The notes: generated by a model from the letters alone, not told the origin. DNA of 64,000 nt from Magallana gigas (GCF_963853765.1 NC_088854.1:29946001-30010000), one strand, 5' to 3'; positions 6,006-26,136 are shown, counted from the first letter of the stretch. Program-made: numbers and translations.

Positions 6006-6974
6006 ACACGTTTACGGAATTCCGTGCCATATGCACATATAAGTTCAAAGGCGCTGTAATTGTAAAGTTGTCGGTAAACACTCACTCACTGTACAGAAAC
6101 AAAGTATTCCTTTTAAAGAAATGATTGGCATGTGATATGAACTACCAGTATTATGAAATAAGTTAATATTATGCCGAAACTACAACATGCATCAAATAGC
6201 ATAATTTGCAATGTTTTGTTGTTTTCCGAATACACATGTAACTTAACGTAGTCGAGGCTAGAGAACTTCCCGATTAATTTTTTTAAGCATTTAATTATGT
6301 CACTATAAAAGTTTGAATCTCAAGAAAAATGCATCAAAATATGAAATTTTTAATTTACACAAAGCTGTCACTGCATAGTTAACAAAGTAGTGCGAATCGT
6401 AATGTGTGCGCAAATAGTAGAATTCACCGAATGCCTGATACTATACATGCAAACTTCATTCATAGATAGATCAAAATTATTTTAGAAGTATGAATCCTTT
6501 AAATTCTGAGATAAAAAGTCAGGGCTATACATACATGTATACGTACGTAATACAATGTTAAAAGCAGAGGGCTAGAGTCGGTGGAATCTCTGATAATCTA
6601 CAGGCTTTCACGTTTTCGTTGGAAACACATGCAAATGGTCCACGTATTGTAGTCCTTTTTTTAAGGACAGCAACTTGTTTACATTTTTTGAAAACAATGG
6701 CGTCATTGATTAATAATATAGGATGGCTGACCACAGCTTGTGTAAACTCACACGTCACAGATTGAAGACGTTACTCTGGTATTTGAGTTCTAATGTTTTA
6801 TGGCCAAACGTGACGTGATCTGTCCCTTGAAGGGGAGTAAGAACCAGATTCTTCCATAAATTCTAATGACAAGTGATGATAATATTAACGACACCTCAAT
6901 CCCCCATTGTCAAATCAAATGTTGCCCAACACCTACTTAAGATGTCGTGCGTGCCAATTAGCTGACACCCGTTG

Positions 6975-6980
6975 TATAAA
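6975..6980 (+). promoter_or_regulatory. Putative TATA box of Met/Gly-rich gene 1
   Basis: GTATAAA, 86 bp upstream of ATG 7061. Confidence 0.55.
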
Positions 6981-7060
6981 TTCTTTCTTCGGAGGCAGAT
7001 TCCGGCATTTTGAAAATTGAGGTTGCAACGCTTAGCCATCTCCCCGCAAATAGCTAAACC

Positions 7061-7824
7061 ATGAACGGATTAATAATTGTCGTAGTAGCACTTTTAGGAT
7101 GTGCATGTAAGTATTCAGTGAATTTCTCTTTCTTTCTTTAGGCATCTCTCCTTTTTTCACTTGCATTTGTTTTATTTTGCCTCTTTTAAATTAAAATTCT
7201 CTGTTGCAATGACTTGACTGGCATTAAAAAATATAACATTTCAACAAAAGCGGCAAAAAAATAAATAAATGAAGAAATAAATAAACAGATAAAATTGAAA
7301 ATTTAACGAAAGAAAAACTTTCTTTCTTTTTGTGATAAAATTTGAAATTTTATGTTCTCTGCACTATAGATGCTCAGATGGATAACCCAATGGCCTTGGC
7401 TATGCTTAGCGGGGGGCTACGTGGCAGTGCCAGCTCAGGAATGTCCGGTGGCATGGACCCAATGAGCCTGGCCCTTTTGGGTGGAGCCGGAAACAGTAAG
7501 ATGTTGAGGATGATGACCTTCATGAACATGATGAAGCCCCAGGAACCCACCCCCACCGAGGCTACCCCCGCCGACCCCGCCCAGCCACGAGCCACCCAGG
7601 ACAACACCAGCGTTAACCCAATGATGAACACCCTCATGACCCTCAGTCTGTGCAAGATCAGCGACACCGCCGGGGACCAGAGATTCTGTACTCCATTCAC
7701 CTGCAAGCTGGAATCTCTGCGCCGGTACGCTAACCCCAGCCTCCTGCAATGCCAACAGATGATGGGATGCTGCTTCAAGGATATGAGATCCATGTACATT
7801 GCTAACATGATGAAGGGATTGTAA
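7061..7824 (+). CDS. Secreted Met/Gly-rich protein with Pro/Thr linker and C-terminal six-Cys module, 166 aa (family member 1). Exons 7061-7106, 7370-7824
   Basis: Exon 1 encodes MNGLIIVVVALLGCA plus T|GTAAGT. Acceptor ctatag at 7369 completes Tyr and joins the 7342-7824 ORF (YAQMDNPMALAMLSGG...CKISDTAGDQRFCTPFTCKLESLRRYANPSLLQCQQMMGCCFKD...). GC-richer than flanks. Confidence 0.92.
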
Positions 7825-10543
7825 AAGTACGTTTCTCTTTCTTTTTTGTTCTAACAACTAGTTTTTTCCACCGCTACTGTCGGAATTAATTGGTTTTTCT
7901 AAAATGTACTGACTGTATTGCAAATTTGGTCAAACTGTAATTTTGGTAATTTGAATCCACCCGCTCCATTGAAAAGAAAAACTGAAATTACGGAAATCTA
8001 ATTTACAGTTCAGAATACACTTAAAGTGCTTTTAGAACAGTATTTTGATAAATTGATGCGGATGTGATAAATTGATATAATTTTAAATATGTAATGACTG
8101 ATTTTGAAAACAAATAACGATCCGGTATTCCGCTTACCAAAAAAAAAACCACCCACATGTACTATTATCGTTTCCGCAATCAATATGAGACAATAGTATT
8201 CGTTTACTATAACAGTATACTAGTATATATTTTCCCGATTAAGAACAATCTTTAATCAATAACAGTATCAATCATTCTGAGACATTAATTATTGTCCTTC
8301 TGCAATAAATCTTCAGGACAGAGACTCTCTATCTGCAAATGTCACTTTCGTCGGGTTTCACGTTAAATGTTATAAGTGTATAGATGTATCGGCGCTCAAG
8401 GTGCGCAAAGTGCCATGCCTGCACTTAACACTGACCGCTTGTATATTAAGACAAATTTACATAGACTGCCCCCTGGGGGCAAAGACTCGTAACTACAGCG
8501 TGACAATTACAGGCTTTCTGCCTGCTAAAAACATGTATCTGATGTTATGTGTCGTAATTTATGACCGATGTTTAAAAAAAAATTGTTGTTCTCTTTGCAG
8601 ATATTTTTTGTCTTGGAGATAGAAGAATATCACAAGGTTCATTTTTCATTCCTCCATTTTTTTTTGTTCTGACGGACGACAAACCGGTGATGCCAGCGTC
8701 TGGTCAACAAAGACTGAACATCTAGGTGCCTCTCGTTTTTCATCTGATGGTCTTCAAAAGACTTGTTGTCACTGTACATGTAATTTATTACAGCATAAAT
8801 TATTGTTTTTGTTAATTAAAAAAACAACCAACGTTAATGTATTTTGTTTTATGATATGAATTCAATGTTTTTTTAAAGGCCAAAACCTTACGTGACATTA
8901 GTAAAGAACAAAGAGTGCATTAATTGAGTTAAATTATACATGTAAATGCACTTCGTTTTTGTAGTTTGGTGATTAAATCCACGTGCAATCGTTGCAAAAT
9001 ACAATGTGCTAAGAATAAAGTACACAATAGCAAAGAAAAATCATAAGCTATAGAAAAGCCTTCCTTTTCGCGTATTTAATATGTTTTCTCAAAGTAAAAG
9101 AAAAACAACATTTTAATTTGTTTTCGTTTTTCTGGGATCCAAATATCACAGGCATAAAACAGAGTTGCAGCCAACTAGGATTTATCTACACGAGTACGTG
9201 AAAAAAGTCAGGACCCCACTAGGTGTATCAAAACTGAAGTCACACTTGATTTAAAGTGTATGATTATAAACTTGATTCTAACTGTTAGGAAAAAACTAAC
9301 AAATTACTTGACGTGCCTCTATTGGCAAAGATATATAAGTATGTCTTTGTTTTATAAATATACTAAGTCTTGTAATTAATAAAATCATTAAAAAAAAACA
9401 TGTTTCATTGCTAAATATTATTTATACAATTGAATGCTTTCTTTGGTGATCCATACGGATATGAAAGCTTCGACATTGCAGAAAAAATACATAACTCTTA
9501 GCGGGTTATGTATTTTTTTTTTTAAATGATCGCTACCTTCATAACCCGCATGAATCATTTCTATAGAGCTATGAATTAACTATAAGTTTCCGTAAGAAGT
9601 AGAGGGAATCATATACTTGATAGATGTAAATATAGTAAATAGATAGATGTAAATATATTCTCTTGAACTCGTAATTTTATTACACAAGAATTTTGTGTCA
9701 TCAACTCTTCAAGCAGACGTATCTTATCATTTTTAAAAAAAAAAATAATAATAATATTTATCAAAATAAAATACAAAAAAGACAAAAAAGGCAAACAAAA
9801 TAAACAAGACACCAAACTCAAAAAAAAAAAAAATAACCCCTCCACCCCGCAAAAATGTAACAACAATCATTTGATAATTTTCTGTTATTAATGTTACCAT
9901 TTGCTTTTATGACGTCTGTTGTTCTGTCTCCTTTCTATCATTAATTTATGAATATGAAATGCGTTTTGTTTTTACCATCTTTCTCTTCCACAACCGATCT
10001 TACTTTTCCCCCATATACATATATTTGCAAATTAAGGGATATTATAAGCTACTTTTCTTTTCAAATACTTTTGGCAAATTCATTTCAAAATGTCCGGTCT
10101 GAAGCTAACGCCATCTATCTATCAATATGCATTGTTTGTGAATTGTAAAGTAATTCGAATGACGTAATTGTTATTCATCCAATCAAAATCATTCACTTTA
10201 TACCCAAGTTTTTTTCTAGCTGAATCCGACTAAACGTGTAAATTGTTATGAAATAACTTGGTAAGGTGCTTTCAGAAGAAAGGTTCAGTAAAAAAATATG
10301 ACTATGGTTGCTTGGAGTTGACATTCTTTTACGCCATTTTTTCAAGTTATGTCCAATCCCATCGGAGAAGGCCCGAGAAGCTGCGATTGGTCTAATCAAA
10401 GTAACCGAATGCTACGGCGCTATATATACTGTATCCAAATTAAAAATAAAAAAAAAAGAAATCAACACAAAGCATTCTTGAGAAAAAAATCACATTTATT
10501 AGAAAACAATCAACGAAGAAGACAACAACAATGACGACATGGA

Positions 10544-11400
10544 TTATCCCTGGGCGGCTGTGGAGCTCTGAGATCCGCCACCCCCGCCGTTGAGGAGACT
10601 GAGCATCATGAGCTTGTCCATCTTTGCGCCGCCGCTGTTACCCAGAAGTGACATCATCACGAATGGGTTAATGCCACCCCCGCCTCCTTTGTTGTTTCCT
10701 AGTAAGGACATCATCATCATATTCTGAGCCATGTTTTCTGAGAATTGTGCTTGGACATCTATGGGGAAACCAAAAATGACAATTGAGTTAAATACGAAGA
10801 CAGTCTGTTCTGTTTATAGAAGGTAAAAAAAATATCTTCTGAAAATGAATGAAGCTTACTGATATAAATTATTTCTTCACACAACTGTCAATTTAAATTT
10901 ATCTCTTATCTTTATCCATTCTGAACTTGAGCGCAATTTTTTTGCTATTTTTTGCTATGACTTGAAATTCGGAAATGTATAACGATGGACTTGCATCATT
11001 TATCGCGTATTTACTTAATAATATGAAAATAAATCATATGCATTTACACTTGACATATTGGGAGGAATATTTTTGAGTTACCACAAAAAACAATGCTTTA
11101 AAATGGAGCGCTTAAATAGAATTAAAGTAATCCTTTAAAATGGTATTATACAATCATGCAAATTTGGTAAAAAAATATAAGGAAAAACTCTTGACTTTTA
11201 CTTATATTTGAATTAATTGCGTATTTTTGCTTCGTTACTTCAAATTTTCGACGGAAATTGCTAAGAAAAGAAATTATATTCGATTTGAACAAAAAAAAAA
11301 GGCTTTGTAATTTAACTTTCTAAAAATAGATATGACATAACTTATAAAAATACTTACATGTAACGGTGAATATTAATGCTAAAATAAATAGTCCTTTCAT
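10544..11400 (-). CDS. Secreted Met/Gly-rich protein without the Cys module, 85 aa (family member 2). Exons 11400-11358, 10758-10544
   Basis: Exon 1 encodes MKGLFILALIFTVT plus T|GTAAGT. Acceptor ccatag completes Tyr, giving YVQAQFSEN followed by ORF 10732-10544 (MAQNMMMMSLLGNNKGGGGG...). Same phase-1 split Tyr codon as members 1 and 3. Confidence 0.9.
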
Positions 11401-11491
11401 TTTGACTGTTTCTATAGCATAAAACTATGCGCACAGCGTTGAGGTGATGAGTGTCCGATGTGAATCCTGTCAAACAACTGTGACCTTCCAC

Positions 11492-11498
11492 TTATATA
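11492..11498 (-). promoter_or_regulatory. Putative TATA box of Met/Gly-rich gene 2
   Basis: TATATAA on the minus strand, about 92 bp upstream of ATG 11400. Confidence 0.5.
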
Positions 11499-12004
11499 GT
11501 GGCAACAAAAGCGTCAAGAGCCTCTGGTTTTGGCCAGTGGGCACTAGACGGACGACCATAGACAGTAACTCATGTGTAAGAGACCCCCCTATTTCTCGAC
11601 GTGTAATAAAGATATATCATTGTTTTCCAGAGTTTTTCAGATAGGGGAAAATGTCAAAATTATTTTGATTACAAGATGAATGACGTCTATTATAGCACGG
11701 CTCCTTGACAAGCATTCGGTCTGTACTGTCATAGTTTTCTTTCATCACGCATTCGTATTTTAAGAAATAAAAGTGATATCGGCGGTAAATCTCTACAGAT
11801 TTTTTATTATTTTCATATTTATGCTTAAAAGAGAACTCACCTACCTAACCGGTGCCTTTTATGTTTATTTCTACATTGATTAAAAAAAAGCGTATGCTTT
11901 TCTAAAGTCTATTGTTTTGTACAACGGGGTGCTTGGGTTTTAGAACGTAGAGGAAGACAGCGATGCTTTATTTAGAGACATTAAAGCACAAAACTAAGGT
12001 AGTG

Positions 12005-12209
12005 TTATCATGAAATGTATTGTTTTTACAGTACGTGCAGTATGCTATCAAACCCTAGTTCTTACAAAAACATTTTTTTTGTGGCGTAAAATGAAGATTT
12101 TGTAAAATTAGTTTTATCGTGAAATGTATTGATTTTACAGTCCGTGTATTATGCTATCGAACCATAATTCTTATAAATAATTTTTTTGTGGCGTAAAATG
12201 AAGATTTTT
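12005..12209. repeat. Degenerate tandem duplication, period ~109 bp
   Basis: TTATC(A/G)TGAAATGTATTG...TTTTTTTGTGGCGTAAAATGAAGATTTT occurs at 12005 and again at 12114. Confidence 0.75.
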
Positions 12210-12356
12210 TATTTAAAAAGGTGAACAGTTGCAGAAATCAAGCAATGTCCACTTTTAACACTTATATGAAATATGAAATTTTACTGTCATATTCTTTTAT
12301 CTGTCAAATCATGCTGCATGATTTGCACGTGCTAGAGCTGAAGCGTCAACTGAACA

Positions 12357-12450
12357 TTTTAGGTCACCTGGCTTATTCTGGTGACCTAAATTTATTTGCA
12401 ATTAGGGGTCGGTTGACAGCGGTCATCCTTTGAACATTTTACTTCTTGGT
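12357..12450 (+). mobile_element. Degenerate Helentron/HINE-like (Pearl/CvA-type) 5' end
   Basis: TTTTAGGTCACC...GGTGACCTAAA 11-bp hairpin after a T-run resembles the subterminal inverted repeat of bivalve HINEs. Recognised from memory of the family. Confidence 0.4.
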
Positions 12451-13948
12451 CTACCTTGAATAAATTCTGTATAAATTGTAAAGTTCCTAACTTGCTGACT
12501 AAGCATATTAGAATATCATCCAAACTGAGTGAACAAATGCCCATTCATAACATTAAAGGCCCACGGGCCACACAGCGTACGCACACAAATGACTGATTCG
12601 AACCTGGCTCTAACACAAGTAGCTAATAAGCTCTACAAAATCAATTTCAATATAGCGTTTCAATCCCTATTTCCTTCTAGGGTCATATTTGAAAAAAAAA
12701 ATCTGAGTAAAAATGAAACGTTGTTAAATACTGGCTTACTCTCATATCACTTACACACCTTTTGAAAGATATCTTAATATCTATGCACGACTATGTAAAT
12801 ATTACAATCCCCCCCCCCACTCCTCAAATGACCTCAGAATATCCCCTCCAGACCAAACAGTGTCATGTTTACTTCATTTTATTTAAAACAAAGTTATTTT
12901 TGCTGGGGAAGATTTTTGGAACACTCGATAGAGGAAATGGATCAAGTAATGAAAAAAGACTATCTACAGAACTTTATACAATATTGTTTATTATTTTTAA
13001 TGTTTTGATTCAATACATTTGGTTTTTGGTTTTGGTTTTGGTTTGATTTTAATTTACAATGGTAATGCATATATTTTTCAGCAATATCCGGTACTCGTAA
13101 AACTTAGTTAAATAGGTAACAAGCAGTTTTAAGTAACAAATGCCAAGATCAATTCTCTACATAAGAAGATAATGTAGTAAATAAAATGATACGTTTTTTT
13201 TGTAAAATAACACCTTAAAGATCGATACGCTAACTCCTGTATTTAACCGTTTTTCCTTGTTACATTATAAAAGGTTCTTTTTCAACGGTCATTTTTAAAT
13301 AAAGTTAGAATGTAGTTTTAAAAAAAGGGGGGGGGGGGCGCAATTGACTGTCAGTACCTACATGTATGATGTTTTGACGGGGGATCAAAATTCACATCTA
13401 CATGGAATAATTATAGTTGACAAATTACAAATTTCCATTTTCGGACGTATTTTTCCGAAATAAGCAATGAAATTAACACTAAAGGATACAATTTTTAAAA
13501 TTCATCCGTATTTTCTAACACCCAATAGACAACCTAAGAGTCAGCTTCTGTCTGTGTCAAATACAGCTAATATGAAACACTACAGAATCGTGTACTAGCA
13601 TCTACCTTGAGTTCTACAATTTGTAAAAAATGTTTAAAATAGAGATTTATCATCAATGACAACGCATTTTGAGTAAAAGGTGTAATGGTATCGGCTTTTG
13701 TTTTCAAGAGAACTATGTCAAAGTGATCATTTCTAAGCGGTAAGCGTTTTATAAAATACACTTAGAATAGTACGTGTAAAACAACATGTATCAAACACTA
13801 TCATGCAACGATTTTTGGATCTAAAGATTGTTTATCCAAAGATTTCACCTTTAAACCGTCCCTCTAGCTTGTCAGGTTTCAATCCACGGCTTAAAAATGT
13901 GAAGTCAACGAGAATTTTGTATTGGAACCGACCCGTTTTATTGAAAAA

Positions 13949-14271
13949 CAATCGCAACTTCTCGGGCCTTTCCGGCAAGCTCGGAAAAACACCTCGAATG
14001 TATTACCTAGGCGTCCATGACAACCCCCCTTTTTATAAAACTTGATATAAATACAACACATTTTACGATCTGTTGAGATGTAAGCTAGACTTCATTAAAG
14101 TAAATGATATACCCTAGAATATAACACAGAAGCGACTTATAAGGCTGTCTAGCCGATATTTATTTTAATGGGAAGCGACTCCATTTTGTATGAAATTTTA
14201 ACATCCGGTGATGTTAATACATTCGAGGTGTTTTTCCGAGCTTGCCGGAAAGGCCCGAGAAGTTGCGATTG
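13949..14271. mobile_element. Mutator(MULE)-like MITE, 323 bp, perfect 57-bp TIR and 9-bp TSD ATTGAAAAA
   Basis: TIR CAATCGCAAC...GAATGTATTA is perfect at both ends. ATTGAAAAA at 13940-13948 and 14272-14280. A 9-bp TSD with long TIRs is typical of MULEs. Confidence 0.85.
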
Positions 14272-16122
14272 ATTGAAAAATTGTGCATGGTATTCCGAGT
14301 GACTTCCGAATGGAGAAAAGATGTCAACATCTCCCATCATTAATCTCCTTATGTACTAGTAATCTGGTTTCGTTCCATTGAATTTTTGTAGGTAATAAAT
14401 GATAACGTGTGAAAGAAAATATCTTTTATATTTTCCCTGTTATCTATCTTTCACGGGTACTATTTCGTCCAAATATGTGGCTGAATATCTTGGAACAGAC
14501 TGTAGTGTGTTTTGCACTAATATAAAAAGTAGTTTCCAATGAATGTTGTACTCCAGTCGACTTCTGTTCTGGTCATTTCTTTATAAATATGTTGTTTATT
14601 GAAAAAACGGTAATATTATTTATAGACTGGTGGTTGGTCATCCTTTTTTAAATTGGTTAATGTTAAGACTTACCACACAGGAAATATTGTGTGCAATATA
14701 TTTTCAACAATGTTATAATTAAAGATAAACCCAGTTAAAGAATTTGATAATTGATCTTGAACAAATTTGACATTTTGAAGAACATTTAGTACTTCCATAT
14801 CATTTCTAACCTTAGTTTTTGAATTTTTATTACGAGTACTATTATATTAAATCAAATGGCCAACTAATGTAAGATTTAAAACGTCTTAAAACCGAAATCT
14901 ATTATATCAAATATGATGTAAACATGTACCCTCTTCAAATTGATATTATAAAGTGTTTCAAAACTCTAAGAAAGAGCTATATTTTCTTTATAATTGCTAT
15001 TTTCGCATTCCCTTGTTGAAATATAGGGAATGACGGGAATCCGATGTTAAATTACCGAATTTAACGAAGTGTATGCCAAAACAATTGGGCAAAAATATTT
15101 GAAATGAAGCACATTCATATATGGATTGTGAAATAAAAATATAAAGCGAACTCATCATGTATTTTCGTATTTTATTGGCAACAATCATACACGTCGTAAA
15201 ATGTGGATCCCATCACATTCTCACATGAAACGAAGGAGAGACATTTGGTCTTGCGAACAATTGGTTATCAAACGTGGCTCTGAATTTCTCTTTACCCGCA
15301 ATAACAAAGTGTTGAAGTACCGTTTAGGATGAAATTGGTATTAAGTGAAATGATAAAGAAAAACTGCACAACGGAGAGAAAATAAATAGTAGTTCTTTTT
15401 CAGGCGTTGGTGCATCCTTCTGTGTATTTGGTATGCAGAAAGATAACCTGTAATAGAAAGACAAATTGTTATTTTTAAGGTAGCCATTTTTATTTATAGA
15501 CTATCTTTCTCTTTTGATGGATAGTTCGGATAGAGTCAAACAATTAGATCTGTTTTTGTCCTTTTTGATATCCACGTGTCTTCAAACGTTGATGTTCTAT
15601 TCCGGAAAAAATATATGTGCGCATATAAACTTGTCATTTATTCATCACATCAAACGACAATGACCAACCATGGTCAGGTACGCGCATCGCGTCACCAGCT
15701 GTAAAGGTGTCAAGGTAAAAATCGCTATGCAGTAAAAGGGCTCATGTTTCGACATTGCCGATAAAGTTGTCAGTTATATATTTTTTTTCGTAAGGTGTCT
15801 ATACCTAGCTTATAATGCGCTATAGGGTAATTTTGTGGTCAGTAAATGTCTCATTGGATTGTCATTGCGTCATACTGACGCAATAAAAGACAGAATATGT
15901 TATGAATAAGGATATTGTCGATTAATTTCCTTTAGAATGTTAACTTGAACTGTATAGTTTGGAAATTTAATACCATTCATTATCACATGTTTATCGTATC
16001 ATTTGCTAAGACCATCCGAAATCAAATATTTTTCAACGTGTTATGGTTTTATTCCTATAAAATGACATAATTTTATTTTCTAATGAAAAATATTTTTTTC
16101 GATATCCTTACCTCTGATTTTC

Positions 16123-17406
16123 TCAGTTCATCATTTTGCTAAGCTGTAGTGACATATAGTCTTTCAGACAACAACCAATGCCAGCAGGACTACATTTCAT
16201 CAGGTTTGGCATACGGTATTGTCTGAGTGAAAGCAAGTTACAGATGTTTCCGGTGCGGCAAGGGATGGCTTTAACTCCTTCAGTTTCTTTGCAAAGAGTG
16301 TATGGATTGTTAAGGAGGCGCATCATCATGGACCCCATTCCACTACCACCGGCACCGCCGGCTCCGGATAAAGCCATCAAAGCCATTGGGTTTCCTTGTA
16401 CATCTGAAACAATATAGAAATCGTTTAAAATGAGTAAAACTCCTTAACTGCTTACATTGTAACTCTATACTTTTGTAATGAATATATTTGGAATTCCCAT
16501 TAACTCGCTTTGTTATCATTTTAGATATAAAAGTTAAAAAAAAAATGATTGAGATTATCCCATGTTAATCAACAGTTTATCGTGAAGATAATGGCAATAC
16601 AAGTTGTGTATTTTAAATAATTATCATCATGTGAAAAACAGAATGAACACTGACAGTTTATGATTTACAACAAATGGTTATACATGTATATATCATATGT
16701 ACACATTGATAAACATTCGACAAATTTGGAAAGGCACAACGAATACCGCCACCTAAAATGACGACATTTTACAATACAAGGAACCTGCCTCAAGACGCCA
16801 CATTGATGAATAATATATTTGCAATATTATAAAGGAAAAATCAAGAAACCATATGAATATATATATTTAAAATCTACATTTCAAAAGAAATTTGGGAATA
16901 ACAACAAAATTATCAAATTAAAGGACCCCAAAAAATGCAACAAAATATACTAAAATTGGAAATGTTTCGACTTTCTATAGGAGAAAATCTAAGGTTTGTC
17001 GTTTCTATAAGAAATTTTAAGCTACCAATGAATATATTTAGCTGTCAAAAAACACTGGTCTTACCGCCAGAGCTAAGAGCCAATAGAAGGCCTAAATTTC
17101 GCTGTGCGGCTGTAAATAAAATGGCGACCTTTCCCGACATTAAATGTGCATACAATGATAAAAAAAAAAGTGACAAAACGAAATTTAAAAAAAACAAACC
17201 AAAAACATTTTTGCAAAAATATTAGTATCCTCATATTATAGACATACGGAATTTCACAGATTTAGAAATGTCCAAGAGATTAAAAAAAACGGTAAAAATA
17301 ATCCGGGGAAGATATAAAAACAGATGAGAACGTTCATATCCAAAGTGTGAAACTTACAAGTAGTACAACTGAAAACGGCCAAAGCGAGGACAATTTCCTT
17401 GATCAT
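16123..17406 (-). CDS. Secreted Met/Gly-rich protein with C-terminal six-Cys module, 109 aa (family member 3). Exons 17406-17358, 16403-16123
   Basis: Exon 1 encodes MIKEIVLALAVFSCTT plus T|GTAAGT. Acceptor tttcag gives YVQGNP followed by ORF MALMALSGAGGAGGSGMGSMMMRLLNNPYTLCKETEGVKAIPCRTGNICNLLSLRQYRMPNLMKCSPAGIGCCLKDYMSLQLSKMMN. Confidence 0.92.
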
Positions 17407-17495: not shown

Positions 17496-17502
17496 TTTTA
17501 TA
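17496..17502 (-). promoter_or_regulatory. Putative TATA box of Met/Gly-rich gene 3
   Basis: TATAAAA on the minus strand, about 90 bp upstream of ATG 17406. Confidence 0.55.
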
Positions 17503-20061: not shown

Positions 20062-20203
20062 NNNNNNNNNNNNNNNNNNNNNNNNNNNNNNNNNNNNNNN
20101 NNNNNNNNNNNNNNNNNNNNNNNNNNNNNNNNNNNNNNNNNNNNNNNNNNNNNNNNNNNNNNNNNNNNNNNNNNNNNNNNNNNNNNNNNNNNNNNNNNNN
20201 NNN
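20062..20203. other. Assembly gap (142 N)
   Basis: Run of N. Distance and contiguity across it are uncertain. Confidence 0.98.
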
Positions 20204-24318: not shown

Positions 24319-26136
24319 ACAACATGACAGATCTACAGCTAGGTCTATTGATATATGTAGTGCAACCGTATATTGTGTAATTATCACAATAAATCATTAA
24401 AATTTCGAAGTCGCAAGCAAAACGAGGTTAAATACCGGCATATACGACTAAAGGGTATACAAACAAAGCAACAGTTAGGGACTTTACGTTTTTTTCCTTC
24501 TTGAAGACTCAATTATACATCTTTTTGAATCCCATGGTGTCGAAATAAACCAATATTTCACATTTTTGAAGACTGATGGCATAATAATTTAATTCTGACG
24601 TTACGTTTGAATTTTGTACAATTTTACGTCATTTTAAAGGTCAAATGACCGTTTTGATCTACAATGAATTGTAAAAAAAAAAAATATAAGCAATGGATTC
24701 AATGTTAGTTTTATACGATATGAAATGGTTTGAAACAGTTTACGCTTTTTCATAAACCGCTTTGCGGTTGATAAAGCGTAAACTGCCCCAAACCATTTTA
24801 TTTCCCATAAATCAAATAAATATTGAATTCATTCCTTAAATCAAGAATCTCATTTTAGGCAGTGACTGTCGACGGCGCTAAGGTGAGAACCTTTGACCTG
24901 ATGACGTCAAATGGCGTGGTTCACGTCATTGACTCAGTGATGATACCCCCTGCCGGCGATATAGTGACACAGCTGAATGATAACTTTGATTTCACCACGC
25001 TGGTCTCCAAGGTCACTCAGGCGGGGCTTGCTTCTGCACTACAGGGTGAGAATCGTCGACTTGTACACATTATGAACGGTTCATATAAAAATTAAGGGTT
25101 ATACTTTTTGGGGGATGTGGTAGGGTGGGGTGATTTGGTAATTATTTATTCATATTCTGATTGGTTTGAATATTTTTCTTTCAAAATATCTAGTTATGGT
25201 TTTATATGATGGTTTGGTATCCTTTTTTTAGGCAATAATTTGACCGTGTTTGCCCCTACCAATGCTGCTTTTGCGAAACTTAGTGCTTCAACTCTACAGA
25301 AATTAGAAAATGATCCAAATATGCTCAGAGGTACACCACAATCTCAATATTTTTTAAAAAAAGCTATGGATTTAGTATCTTTAATTAAGAAAGTCAATGT
25401 GAAGCATTGCATTCGTTTGGAATCTGTATTTTTAGAGGTCTTGCTATACCACGTTGTTCCGCACACTGTGTATTCCGCTGGATTATTCAACAAAGAGAGG
25501 CTACGAACTCTGGATTCCAACGGGGACCCTATTCAAGTCACTATTACCGGTGAGCAAACTGTTCAAGTATATTAATCATCATCAATATTACACAGTTACG
25601 GCTGTACTAATTGTTATTTCACCCTAGCGTGTTTGTGGAGTCTTCCGTCCCGAACCAAATGATACAGGTTTCATGCATAGGGAAAAAAATCAAAATATTA
25701 AATCAAATTAAAAGAAAAGAAAAAAATCACACACACACGAAATAAATTAATAAATAAGAAGCAGCAAGCTACATGTAGTGAGTTTAAGAACCTAACTTGT
25801 GTATCCACAAACGTATAATGATGGTTTCCAACCGGAACACCTGCCAAGATTGTCGGAAAGCCAAAAAATAGTATTTTAATAGAATCTTGACCAAAATGTA
25901 AATTATCACAAACATTTTTACACAGATAAACTGTTAATATCAATTAGTAATATGAATAAATATTTAAGAGCTTGTCAATAAATGAACACTTTATAAATGT
26001 TTCAGGTGGCAAGGTGTATCTTGACCTTTATTCCCAAGTCACGGAAGCTGACGTCACGGCAACTAATGGAGCTATTCACGTCATTGACCACGTGATCGTC
26101 CCAGATCGCTATTACTTAAATCTCGTCGTGGGTTAA
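23314..26136 (+). CDS. Secreted protein with two FAS1 (fasciclin) domains, TGFBI/periostin-like, 295 aa; divergent paralog of the array genes. Exons 23314-23452, 23733-23950, 24859-25045, 25232-25330, 25436-25549, 26006-26136
   Basis: Signal peptide MIKLLSILSCVQFALCG. Two sets of FAS1 motifs: H1 TVFAPTN, YH (LKYHVV/LLYHVV) and H2 (NGVVHVIDSV/NGAIHVIDHV). All introns are GT-AG with consistent phases; CDS 888 nt, ending ...RYYLNLVVG*. Confidence 0.93.
24199..24335. repeat. Perfect 137-bp nested palindrome (two 68-bp arms, 1-nt spacer), possibly a MITE with TA TSD, in intron 2 of the fasciclin gene
   Basis: The right arm is the exact reverse complement of the left arm. Each arm is itself an imperfect hairpin around TGGGTGGGT/ACCCACCCA. 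Confidence 0.9.

What the first reader, a model, noticed from the sequence alone, without database searches (positions are those of the whole stretch)
7061..17406. Three-gene family of small secreted Met/Gly-rich proteins sharing a split-Tyr intron
Seen: genes at 7061 (+), 11400 (-) and 17406 (-) each have a 43-49-nt signal-peptide exon ending T|GTAAGT, a second exon starting AT that completes Tyr (YAQ/YVQ/YVQ), a TATA box about 90 bp upstream, and Met/Gly low-complexity sequence with NP-M / MMxSLL motifs. Member 1 has about 21 Met in about 149 mature residues. Established: Gly/Met-rich secreted proteins occur in bivalve hinge ligament and shell matrix (abductin, methionine-rich ligament and nacre proteins). 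Inference: a local, diverged paralog family of structural matrix proteins, possibly self-assembling or redox-buffering through Met, that may be undescribed.
Basis: partly seen in the sequence, partly recalled or inferred. Interest (0 to 1): 0.8.

Follow-up and report, generated by a model that had tools for sequence, protein, structure and literature searches.

The report
Conserved methionine-rich secreted bivalve protein family
Three neighbouring oyster genes are real, spliced and expressed, and belong to a previously unstudied family of small secreted methionine-rich proteins found across bivalves, most with a conserved six-cysteine end domain; where they are made and what they do is still unknown.

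Summary
The three genes (ATGs at 7061 +, 11400 -, 17406 -) each have a 46-, 43- or 49-nt signal-peptide exon ending T|GTAAGT. A phase-1 intron follows, exon 2 starts with AT (completing Tyr), and a TATA box lies 86-98 bp upstream. RNA contigs confirm both introns of gene 1, including a 3'UTR intron, and the intron of gene 2.

The family is not local. The three-gene cluster, next to Fasciclin genes, is conserved in Ostrea edulis. The six-Cys C-terminal domain (C-x9-11-C-x4-6-C-x15-C-x5-6-CC) occurs in scallop, pearl oyster, mussels and zebra mussel, always with a Met/Gly-rich N-part and the same phase-1 intron. dN/dS against Ostrea is about 0.05.

Pfam, PDB sequence and four fold searches gave nothing. 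Ten literature searches found no paper on these genes. The known Met-rich ligament protein LMP is unrelated.

The function is inferred only. I favour an abundant, tissue-restricted extracellular protein that self-associates (about 0.35-0.4). A big-defensin- or clip-like effector is the main rival. The shell or ligament matrix role is untested, because the tissue of expression could not be determined.

The parts
6975..6980 (+). Gene 1 TATA box (TATAAA), with a CCAAT at 6954-6958
   Evidence: Read directly. RNA depth is 0 in 6797-6993 and starts in bin 6994-7190, consistent with a start site about 30 bp downstream.
7061..7106 (+). Gene 1 coding part of exon 1: signal peptide, ends with T of the split Tyr codon
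   Evidence: A loose end of 13 nt before 7370 in an X3 contig equals the end of this exon.
7107..7369 (+). Gene 1 intron 1, 263 nt, phase 1, GTAAGT..AG
   Evidence: The spliced model equals XP_019928642.3.
7370..7826 (+). Gene 1 exon 2: the whole mature protein (stop 7822-7824). Met-rich NP units, a Pro/Thr linker and the six-Cys domain (7645-7821).
   Evidence: X3 contig record 9 covers 7370-7826 at depth 186; X1 depth reaches about 6000.
7827..8600 (+). Gene 1 3'UTR intron, 774 nt, GT..AG, beginning 2 nt after the stop codon
   Evidence: Joint 7826->8601 in X1 and X3 contigs and in 2 raw reads of X22.
8601..9200 (+). Gene 1 3'UTR exon (3' end approximate)
   Evidence: X3 record 9 reaches 9095 and X1 record 5 reaches 9206.
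11492..11498 (-). Gene 2 TATA box (TATATAA)
   Evidence: The RNA contig ends at 11468, about 25-30 bp downstream.
11358..11468 (-). Gene 2 exon 1 (5'UTR plus signal peptide, ATG at 11400)
   Evidence: X3 record 13 covers 11358-11468.
10759..11357 (-). Gene 2 intron, 599 nt, phase 1
   Evidence: Joint 10758/11358 (CT..AC on the + strand) in X1 (depth 699) and X3 (depth 324).
10478..10758 (-). Gene 2 exon 2 (CDS to the stop at 10546-10544). A Met/Gly-rich mature protein of about 67 aa without cysteines. AATAAA lies near 10500.
   Evidence: X1 record 7 covers 10478-10758. Orthologues at 88% and 68% identity, one of them in Ostrea edulis.
17496..17502 (-). Gene 3 TATA box (TATAAAA)
17358..17406 (-). 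Gene 3 coding part of exon 1: signal peptide, ends with T of the split Tyr codon
   Evidence: It matches the exon-1 part of the C. virginica and S. echinata models.
17065..17109 (-). Optional 45-nt phase 1-1 cassette exon inside the gene 3 intron. It encodes one more hydrophobic unit (…NLGLLLALSSG).
   Evidence: Present in the C. angulata / M. gigas model P0001 and in K1QLF6. AG and GT flank it in the window. Its use was not checked with reads.
16123..16403 (-). Gene 3 exon 2: mature protein with one NP unit, a Gly-rich linker and the six-Cys domain (16299-16126); stop at 16125-16123
   Evidence: dN/dS against Ostrea is 0.044.

Best explanation
What it is (shown). These are three real, expressed two- or three-exon genes of Magallana gigas. 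They form a cluster that is conserved in Ostreidae, and they belong to a bivalve-wide, uncharacterised family of small secreted proteins.

The family architecture has three parts:
- A signal peptide on its own exon, closed by an ancestral phase-1 intron.
- One to four short Met/Leu-rich hydrophobic units. Each is opened by Asn/Asp-Pro and closed by Gly runs (for example NPMALAMLSGG).
- A basic C-terminal domain of about 55 residues with six cysteines in the order C..C..C..C..CC, followed by a short Met-rich helix.

Gene 1 and gene 3 represent two old subfamilies. Gene 2 is a conserved member that lacks the cysteine domain.

How it most likely works (inferred, not shown). The proteins are made in large amounts by one tissue or stage and exported. 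The disulfide-locked basic domain acts as the specific binding or anchoring module. The flexible Met/Leu-Gly part provides reversible hydrophobic self-association. Together they would build or condition an extracellular material that all bivalves share, such as ligament or shell-associated matrix, periostracum, mucus or crystalline style. The ligament or shell matrix is one candidate, not a demonstrated site.
For: - Gene models and splicing.
- Abundant but restricted expression: contig depth reaches about 6000 on gene 1 exons and about 900 on gene 2 in X1, and 186 and 324 in X3. There is zero depth upstream of the start sites. Two poly(A) RNA raw-read runs of the same species have essentially no reads.
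- Apparent co-expression: the top RNA-like runs hold 24-32% of the words of 7050-17040, which is about the exon share of all three genes.
- Only two cysteine-domain loci exist in the 564-Mb genome, and both are here.
- The cluster order g3-g2-g1 beside a Fasciclin gene is the same in Ostrea edulis.
- The profile search finds 19 cluster representatives, 17 of them at E<=1e-10. They include Argopecten, Pinctada, Mytilus and Dreissena proteins, all named 'uncharacterized'.
- A phase-1 intron lies 43-49 nt into the CDS in Ostrea, Mytilus, Argopecten and Dreissena.
- Purifying selection: dN/dS is 0.046 (gene 1) and 0.044 (gene 3), with saturated dS.
- Met content of 6-16% persists across the family.
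- The cysteine part has a net charge of +4/+5 and pI about 9. The N-part is neutral to acidic.
Against: - No tissue, proteome or biochemical datum was obtained, so the extracellular-material role rests on composition, abundance and phylogenetic spread.
- Strong sequence conservation and single-copy status are unusual for shell-matrix proteins, and would equally suit a ligand or another conserved physiological role.
- The proteins are small and not truly repetitive, unlike abductin or LMP.
- Structure prediction is poor (pLDDT 50 and 60), so the domain's fold and disulfide pairing are unknown.
- The homodimer prediction gave no answer.
Confidence: 0.38

Rival explanations
1. Membrane-active or aggregating immune effectors. 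A hydrophobic, fusion-peptide-like Met/Ala/Gly N-part is joined to a cationic disulfide domain with the C..C..C..C..CC order of beta-defensins, big defensins and clip domains. The protein would act on microbial membranes or assemble on microbes, as big defensins do.
For: - The cysteine order and the terminal CC.
- The C-domain has a net charge of +4/+5 and pI about 9.
- UniProt automatically names the M. gigas gene-1 protein 'Clip domain-containing protein'.
- The weak, non-significant fold rows are mostly helix-plus-hairpin defensins and toxins.
Against: - No Pfam defensin, big-defensin or CLIP match for any of the 22 members. The weak CLIP hits in the genome lie elsewhere.
- The C1-C2 (9-11) and C3-C4 (15) spacings exceed defensin ranges (own knowledge).
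- The genes are single-copy, have dN/dS about 0.05 and are conserved across bivalves, unlike the fast-evolving, copy-variable antimicrobial genes of bivalves (own knowledge).
- Gene 2 has no cysteine domain, and the gene 1 N-part is acidic.
Confidence: 0.2
2. Secreted signalling ligands (hormone-, growth-factor- or pheromone-like). Their conserved cysteine domain would bind a receptor, and the Met-rich part would be a pro-region or carrier.
For: - The cysteine domain is very strongly conserved: 91-94% identity among four oyster sequences, including C. virginica and Saccostrea echinata, and nearly invariant CSPxGxGCCxKD from oysters to Dreissena.
- Single-copy orthologues and low dN/dS.
Against: - There are no dibasic processing sites between the parts.
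- The contig depth is very high for a signal molecule.
- The Met-rich composition is itself conserved across the family, and the conserved gene 2 has no cysteine domain at all.
Confidence: 0.12
3. Methionine-based chemistry. The proteins would be soluble Cu(I)/metal-binding or oxidant-scavenging proteins of mucus, haemolymph or extrapallial fluid, using clustered thioethers (MMMM, MxxM, MxM runs).
For: 12-15% Met in all three proteins, with clustered MxM/MMxM runs. Oysters accumulate copper, and Met-rich motifs bind Cu(I) in Ctr1/CusF-type proteins (own knowledge).
Against: The Met positions are interchangeable with Leu among orthologues (for example NPMALAML versus SPLTLAML). This points to hydrophobicity rather than to a thioether ligand. 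There is no His/Cys/Met motif regularity and no experimental datum.
Confidence: 0.08
4. Annotation noise: chance ORFs or decaying gene copies without function.
For: Low-complexity sequence. Several public models of these loci are clearly wrong (fusions, cryptic donors).
Against: Spliced, abundant RNA. Orthologues with the same structure in five bivalve families. dN/dS about 0.05.
Confidence: 0.02

Closest known systems
Big defensins / beta-defensin-like domains (molluscs, horseshoe crab)
   Same: Secreted. A hydrophobic N-terminal part is followed by a cationic C-terminal domain with six cysteines in the order C..C..C..C..CC.
   Different: - No sequence-model match.
- Longer C1-C2 and C3-C4 spacings.
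- A predicted helix lies between C3 and C4, and an extra C-terminal helix follows the CC.
- No dibasic propeptide.
- Both parts sit on one exon.
- Single-copy and slowly evolving.
CLIP domain of arthropod clip-domain serine proteases (PF12032 / PROSITE PS51888)
   Same: Six cysteines with a terminal CC. The C1-C6 span of about 40-44 residues lies within the 37-55 quoted for clip domains (own knowledge). UniProt's automatic name for the M. gigas gene-1 protein is 'Clip domain-containing protein'.
   Different: The Pfam CLIP model matches no member, even at E<=10. The domain is C-terminal and stands alone, with no trypsin-like protease or homologue attached. No clip structure appears in any fold search.
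Met/Gly-rich bivalve ligament and shell proteins (abductin; Pinctada LMP, NU-5, MRNP34)
   Same: Secreted bivalve proteins with unusually high Met and Gly content.
   Different: LMP is a run of MMMKPD repeats, and NU-5 and the other insoluble proteins are 45-190 kDa repeat proteins (PMC7591529). The present proteins are 7-16 kDa and are not tandem-repetitive. They carry a conserved disulfide domain, show no similarity to LMP, and have no proteomic or tissue link to ligament or shell so far.

Membership tests
Bivalve Met-rich six-Cys family (defined here, alignment A4) | C-terminal domain L-C-x9-11-C-x4-6-C-x3-S-x3-Y-x2-P-x4-C-x5-6-G-CC-x-[KRS]-D | tested here: met
   Genes 1 and 3 match. The profile finds them at E 1e-20 and 4e-28 in the genome. 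Gene 2 lacks the domain.
Bivalve Met-rich six-Cys family (defined here, alignment A4) | Signal-peptide exon of 43-49 coding nt closed by a phase-1 intron | tested here: met
   All three window genes, and Ostrea, Mytilus, Argopecten and Dreissena members. The split codon is Tyr only in Crassostrea/Saccostrea (His, Asn, Leu and Val elsewhere).
Bivalve Met-rich six-Cys family (defined here, alignment A4) | Met/Gly-rich N-part with [ND]-P-hydrophobic units | tested here: met
   Met 6-16% and Gly 7-19% in 17 members. NP/DP units are listed.
Big defensin / beta-defensin | Match to the Pfam defensin models | tested here: not met
   No Pfam hit at E<=1 for the three proteins or at E<=10 for the 22 domain sequences.
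Big defensin / beta-defensin | Cysteine spacing about C-x4-8-C-x3-5-C-x9-14-C-x4-7-CC (own knowledge) | tested here: not met
   The observed spacing is C-x9-11-C-x4-6-C-x15-C-x5-6-CC. The order is the same, but two spacings are out of range.
Big defensin / beta-defensin | Three-stranded beta-sheet fold with disulfides 1-5, 2-4, 3-6 | tested here: inconclusive
   The model has pLDDT 60 overall and 70-75 in the domain, predicted as helix, hairpin, helix. No significant fold match was found. The disulfide map cannot be tested here.
CLIP domain | Match to Pfam PF12032 | tested here: not met
   The genome-wide scan with PF12032 gives only weak hits on other chromosomes, and those do not look like real clip exons.
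CLIP domain | Lies N-terminal to a trypsin-like serine protease or protease homologue | tested here: not met
   The proteins end 13-15 residues after the CC. No protease exon is part of the RNA contigs.
CLIP domain | PROSITE profile PS51888 | not testable with these tools
   Only indirect evidence: the UniProt automatic name 'Clip domain-containing protein' for A0A8W8L2E2. The Dreissena orthologue is auto-named 'Hydrophobin', so such names are weak.
Abductin / LMP-type Met-rich ligament proteins | Protein built mostly of tandem Gly/Met or Met/Lys/Pro/Asp repeats | tested here: not met
   There are two to four loosely similar units and no tandem array. The LMP sequence read shows no resemblance.
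Abductin / LMP-type Met-rich ligament proteins | Found in the ligament or shell proteome, or expressed in the mantle isthmus | not testable with these tools
   Run identities are coded. No paper or supplement searched holds the accessions.

The most novel reading that the evidence does not exclude
The family is the conserved, bivalve-specific protein component of a bivalve-specific material, most attractively the Met/Gly-rich rubber of the hinge ligament in non-pectinid bivalves. A new disulfide fold would anchor or cross-link the protein, and Met/Leu-Gly segments would give reversible hydrophobic elasticity or coacervation. Gene 2 would act as a domain-less filler or regulator.
Probability: 0.13. 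Interest if true: 0.75.

Novelty: new variant of a known kind. Interest (0 to 1): 0.45.

Why it matters
Methionine-rich secreted proteins are a recurring but poorly understood theme in bivalve ligament and shell. The few that have been characterised are large, lineage-specific repeat proteins.

Here the family is small and strongly conserved, and it is seen in both pteriomorph and heterodont bivalves. It has clear orthologues in every commercial group (oysters, pearl oysters, mussels, scallops) and in zebra mussels. Its cysteine domain matches no Pfam family, solved structure or predicted fold.

If the proteins prove to be part of an extracellular material, they offer a tractable 7-16 kDa entry point to Met-based elasticity or assembly. 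If they are effectors or ligands, they define a new bivalve cysteine-rich class. Either way, the corrected gene models and family profile make targeted proteome and in-situ tests possible.

Tried and rejected
- **Pfam:** scans of the three proteins and of 22 domain sequences gave nothing.
- **PDB sequence search with the family profile:** only a chance row at E 2.4.
- **Structure prediction:** AlphaFold2 with family alignments gave pLDDT 50 (gene 1) and 60 (gene 3).
- **Fold searches with the gene 3 model:** AFDB clusters, VIA-align wide PDB, Foldseek PDB and AFDB Swiss-Prot gave nothing significant. The best result was Z 2.9, and all E values were above 0.9.
- **ESM Atlas by features:** no usable hit.
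- **CLIP lead:** PF12032 does not touch these loci. The weak genomic hits elsewhere are not usable clip exons, so no profile-profile test could be built.
- **Homodimer prediction for gene 3:** no answer, score 0.00. This is evidence neither for nor against binding.
- **Literature:** ten full-text searches on accessions, LOC ids, UniProt ids, conserved peptides, 'hydrophobin Dreissena', 'clip domain oyster' and Met-rich bivalve proteins found no paper on these genes. One supplement search for the C. virginica ids was blank. The two most abundant 'unknown' digestive-gland peptides of Mytilus (PMC4203926) have four cysteines and could not be linked to this family.
- **Tissue of expression:** run names are coded, and the exact-protein look-ups returned only DNA resequencing contigs.
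- **Possible pseudogene remnant at 14954-15090:** this is chance; the frames are full of stops.
- **More family members within 10 kb of the Mytilus, Pinctada and one unnamed species' loci:** none found.
Full report
**Observation.**
- Gene 1 (+ strand) has a 46-nt coding first exon (7061-7106), a 263-nt intron and a second exon from 7370.
- Gene 2 (- strand) has a 43-nt first exon (11400-11358), a 599-nt intron and a second exon from 10758.
- Gene 3 (- strand) has a 49-nt first exon (17406-17358), a 954-nt intron and a second exon from 16403.
- All three donors read T|GTAAGT. All three second exons begin with AT after the acceptor AG, so a Tyr codon is split in phase 1 (YAQ, YVQ, YVQ).
- The products are 166, 85 and 109 aa.
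- TATA boxes lie 86, 98 and 96 bp before the ATGs.
- By the -3/-1 rule (my inference), the signal peptides end after AYA, VQA and VQG, so the split Tyr belongs to the end of the signal peptide.
- The mature proteins have 14.1, 14.9 and 12.4% Met and 8-22% Gly.

**RNA evidence.** One search for runs and one laying of reads were allowed. I laid 6600-12500, which covers genes 1 and 2.
- Two contig sets (X1, X3) behave as RNA. Depth is zero upstream of the predicted start sites and between the genes, and reaches about 6000 (X1) or 186 (X3) on gene 1 exon 2.
- A GT..AG joint is present for the gene 2 intron (10758/11358, in both runs).
- For gene 1, an X3 contig starting at 7370 carries the last 13 nt of exon 1 as a loose end.
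- The same contig continues across a second joint (7826 to 8601, 774 nt, GT..AG). Gene 1 therefore has a 3'UTR intron that starts 2 nt after the stop codon.
- Two poly(A) RNA raw-read runs of the same species, sampled at about 1%, show essentially no reads on either gene, although nearby repeats are covered. Expression is therefore abundant but restricted.
- The best RNA-like runs hold 24-32% of the words of 7050-17040. That is about what the exons of all three genes add up to, so the three are probably co-expressed (inference).
Its two-exon form is supported by the C. virginica and Saccostrea echinata models and by selection (below).
- The RefSeq M. gigas protein XP_019928642.3 is identical to the gene 1 model, which also identifies the species.

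**Paralogy.**
- Genes 1 and 3 share a C-terminal domain: 37% identity over 57 aa, E about 1e-7 in the window.
- Gene 2 shares only the low-complexity N-part (E 1e-3 to 7e-5). It does share the same intron phase and split codon, the same units (NPFVMMSLLG versus NPMALAMLSG), and its position between the other two.
- A protein search and a profile search of the whole 564-Mb genome find only these two cysteine-domain loci.

**Evolutionary spread.**
- Orthologues of all three genes exist in other oysters.
- In Ostrea edulis the order g3-g2-g1, the relative orientations and a flanking Fasciclin gene are the same as here, spread over about 46 kb.
- A profile of the cysteine domain searched against 1.8 billion cluster representatives found 19 proteins, 17 of them at E<=1e-10.
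- The named hits are 'uncharacterized' proteins of Argopecten irradians, Pinctada imbricata, three Mytilus species and Dreissena polymorpha.
- The alignment splits into a gene-3-like group (NNPxxLC[RK]xTENxxxxPC…CSPxGxGCCxKD) and a gene-1-like group (…RFCTPxxC…QCxxxxGCCFKD). Both occur in several pteriomorph families, so the duplication is old.
- Every member has a signal peptide and a Met/Gly-rich N-part.
- The phase-1 intron 43-49 nt into the CDS is present in Ostrea, Mytilus, Argopecten and Dreissena. The split codon there is His, Asn, Leu or Val. The intron is therefore ancestral, and the 'split Tyr' is a Crassostrea/Saccostrea detail.
- Against Ostrea, synonymous sites are saturated while dN is 0.17, 0.11 and 0.27 for genes 1, 3 and 2. 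That gives dN/dS of 0.046 for gene 1 and 0.044 for gene 3. Gene 2's ratio could not be computed because its dS is saturated.

**Comparison with known families.**
- Pfam finds nothing. A PDB sequence search with the profile finds nothing.
- Structure prediction is weak, with pLDDT 50 and 60. The gene 3 domain reaches 70-75 and is predicted as helix, beta-hairpin, helix.
- Four fold searches give no significant match. The weak rows are mostly helix-plus-hairpin defensins and toxins.
- The cysteine order C..C..C..C..CC is that of beta-defensins, big defensins and arthropod clip domains. The C-domain is basic, with net charge +4/+5.
- UniProt's automatic name for the M. gigas gene 1 protein is 'Clip domain-containing protein', while the Dreissena orthologue is auto-named 'Hydrophobin'.
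- The Pfam CLIP model does not touch these loci even at E<=10. No protease domain is attached, and two of the cysteine spacings lie outside defensin ranges. I therefore do not file the domain under either family. It remains an unassigned disulfide domain that may work like them.
- The Met-rich ligament protein LMP and the other insoluble Met-rich proteins of Pinctada (PMC7591529, supplement) are large repeat proteins with no resemblance.

**Mechanism.** The following points are shown:
- The proteins are secreted, judging from the signal peptide.
- Expression is abundant and restricted.
- The genes are single-copy and under strong constraint.
- The family is bivalve-wide.

The rest is inferred. 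The N-part consists of short uncharged hydrophobic stretches in which Met and Leu interchange between orthologues. Each stretch is opened by Asn/Asp-Pro and closed by Gly. That arrangement favours flexible hydrophobic self-association rather than thioether chemistry. The basic, disulfide-locked domain is the conserved recognition or anchoring part.

My best reading (about 0.38) is an abundant extracellular protein that self-associates in a material common to all bivalves. Ligament or shell matrix is one candidate (about 0.13 on its own). Rivals:
- A big-defensin- or clip-like effector (0.2). Single copy and slow evolution count against it.
- A signalling ligand (0.12). The very high expression, the conserved Met-rich part and gene 2's lack of the cysteine domain count against it.
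- Metal or oxidant buffering (0.08).

**Novelty.** The gene models are in RefSeq as 'uncharacterized'. Several other public models are wrong:
- K1QLF6 fuses genes 3 and 2.
- A0A8W8L097 and A0A8W8L2F2 use cryptic donors inside exon 2.
- The Ostrea gene 2 model starts in a retrotransposon fragment.

Ten full-text searches found no paper on the genes, their ids or their peptides. Subscription journals were not covered. I rate this an undescribed family of a familiar general kind: a lineage-restricted small secreted cysteine-rich protein with a low-complexity part.

**Limits.**
- The tissue of expression is unknown because run names are coded.
- Gene 3 splicing and its cassette exon were not checked with reads.
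- The fold and disulfides are unknown.
- The complex prediction gave no answer.
It makes the same defensin comparison and adds no independent evidence.

Noticed in passing
window 31800-64000 (also 25240-25575): Six tandem copies (period 5.7-6.6 kb, 65-100% identity between copies) of a gene with a signal peptide and a Fasciclin (FAS1) domain exon (PF02469, E 4e-20). A further Fasciclin exon lies at 25240-25575. A Fasciclin gene also flanks the orthologous cluster in Ostrea edulis.
   Followed up: partly
window 17065-17109 (- strand): A 45-nt phase 1-1 cassette exon in the gene 3 intron encodes one more hydrophobic unit. It is included in the C. angulata / M. gigas model (157 aa) but not in the C. 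virginica or Saccostrea models. Its real use is unchecked.
   Followed up: partly
window 7826/8601, and 16111 on the - strand: Gene 1 has a confirmed 774-nt 3'UTR intron that starts 2 nt after the stop. Gene 3 has a good donor (AG|GTAAGG) 11 nt after its stop, which suggests the same layout. Gene 2 has none.
   Followed up: partly
window 6600-6796 and 9358-9751: These two stretches are covered in all four runs, including the poly(A) raw-read runs. They show many loose ends, odd joints and strand switches, as expected for expressed dispersed repeats rather than parts of the three genes.
   Followed up: no
window 11468 (- strand) and beyond: The X3 contig that carries spliced gene 2 continues for about 310 nt past the start site. 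That sequence is found nowhere in the window. It is either a chimeric contig or a distant 5' exon.
   Followed up: partly
window 16123-16125: The TGA stop of gene 3 corresponds to Trp in several relatives, which run on for 1-11 more residues (…MMNWEDHR, …MLNWDTNSK). The M. gigas protein therefore ends one codon early relative to those forms.
   Followed up: no
window 20062-20203: The only run of N in the window (142 bases). It lies outside the finding and was left alone.
   Followed up: no
L008 (Ostrea edulis OX387705.1) 14136-14255: The RefSeq model of the Ostrea gene 2 orthologue (LOC125681962) takes a reverse-transcriptase fragment 17 kb upstream as its first exon. The true signal-peptide exon is probably missed.
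   Followed up: no
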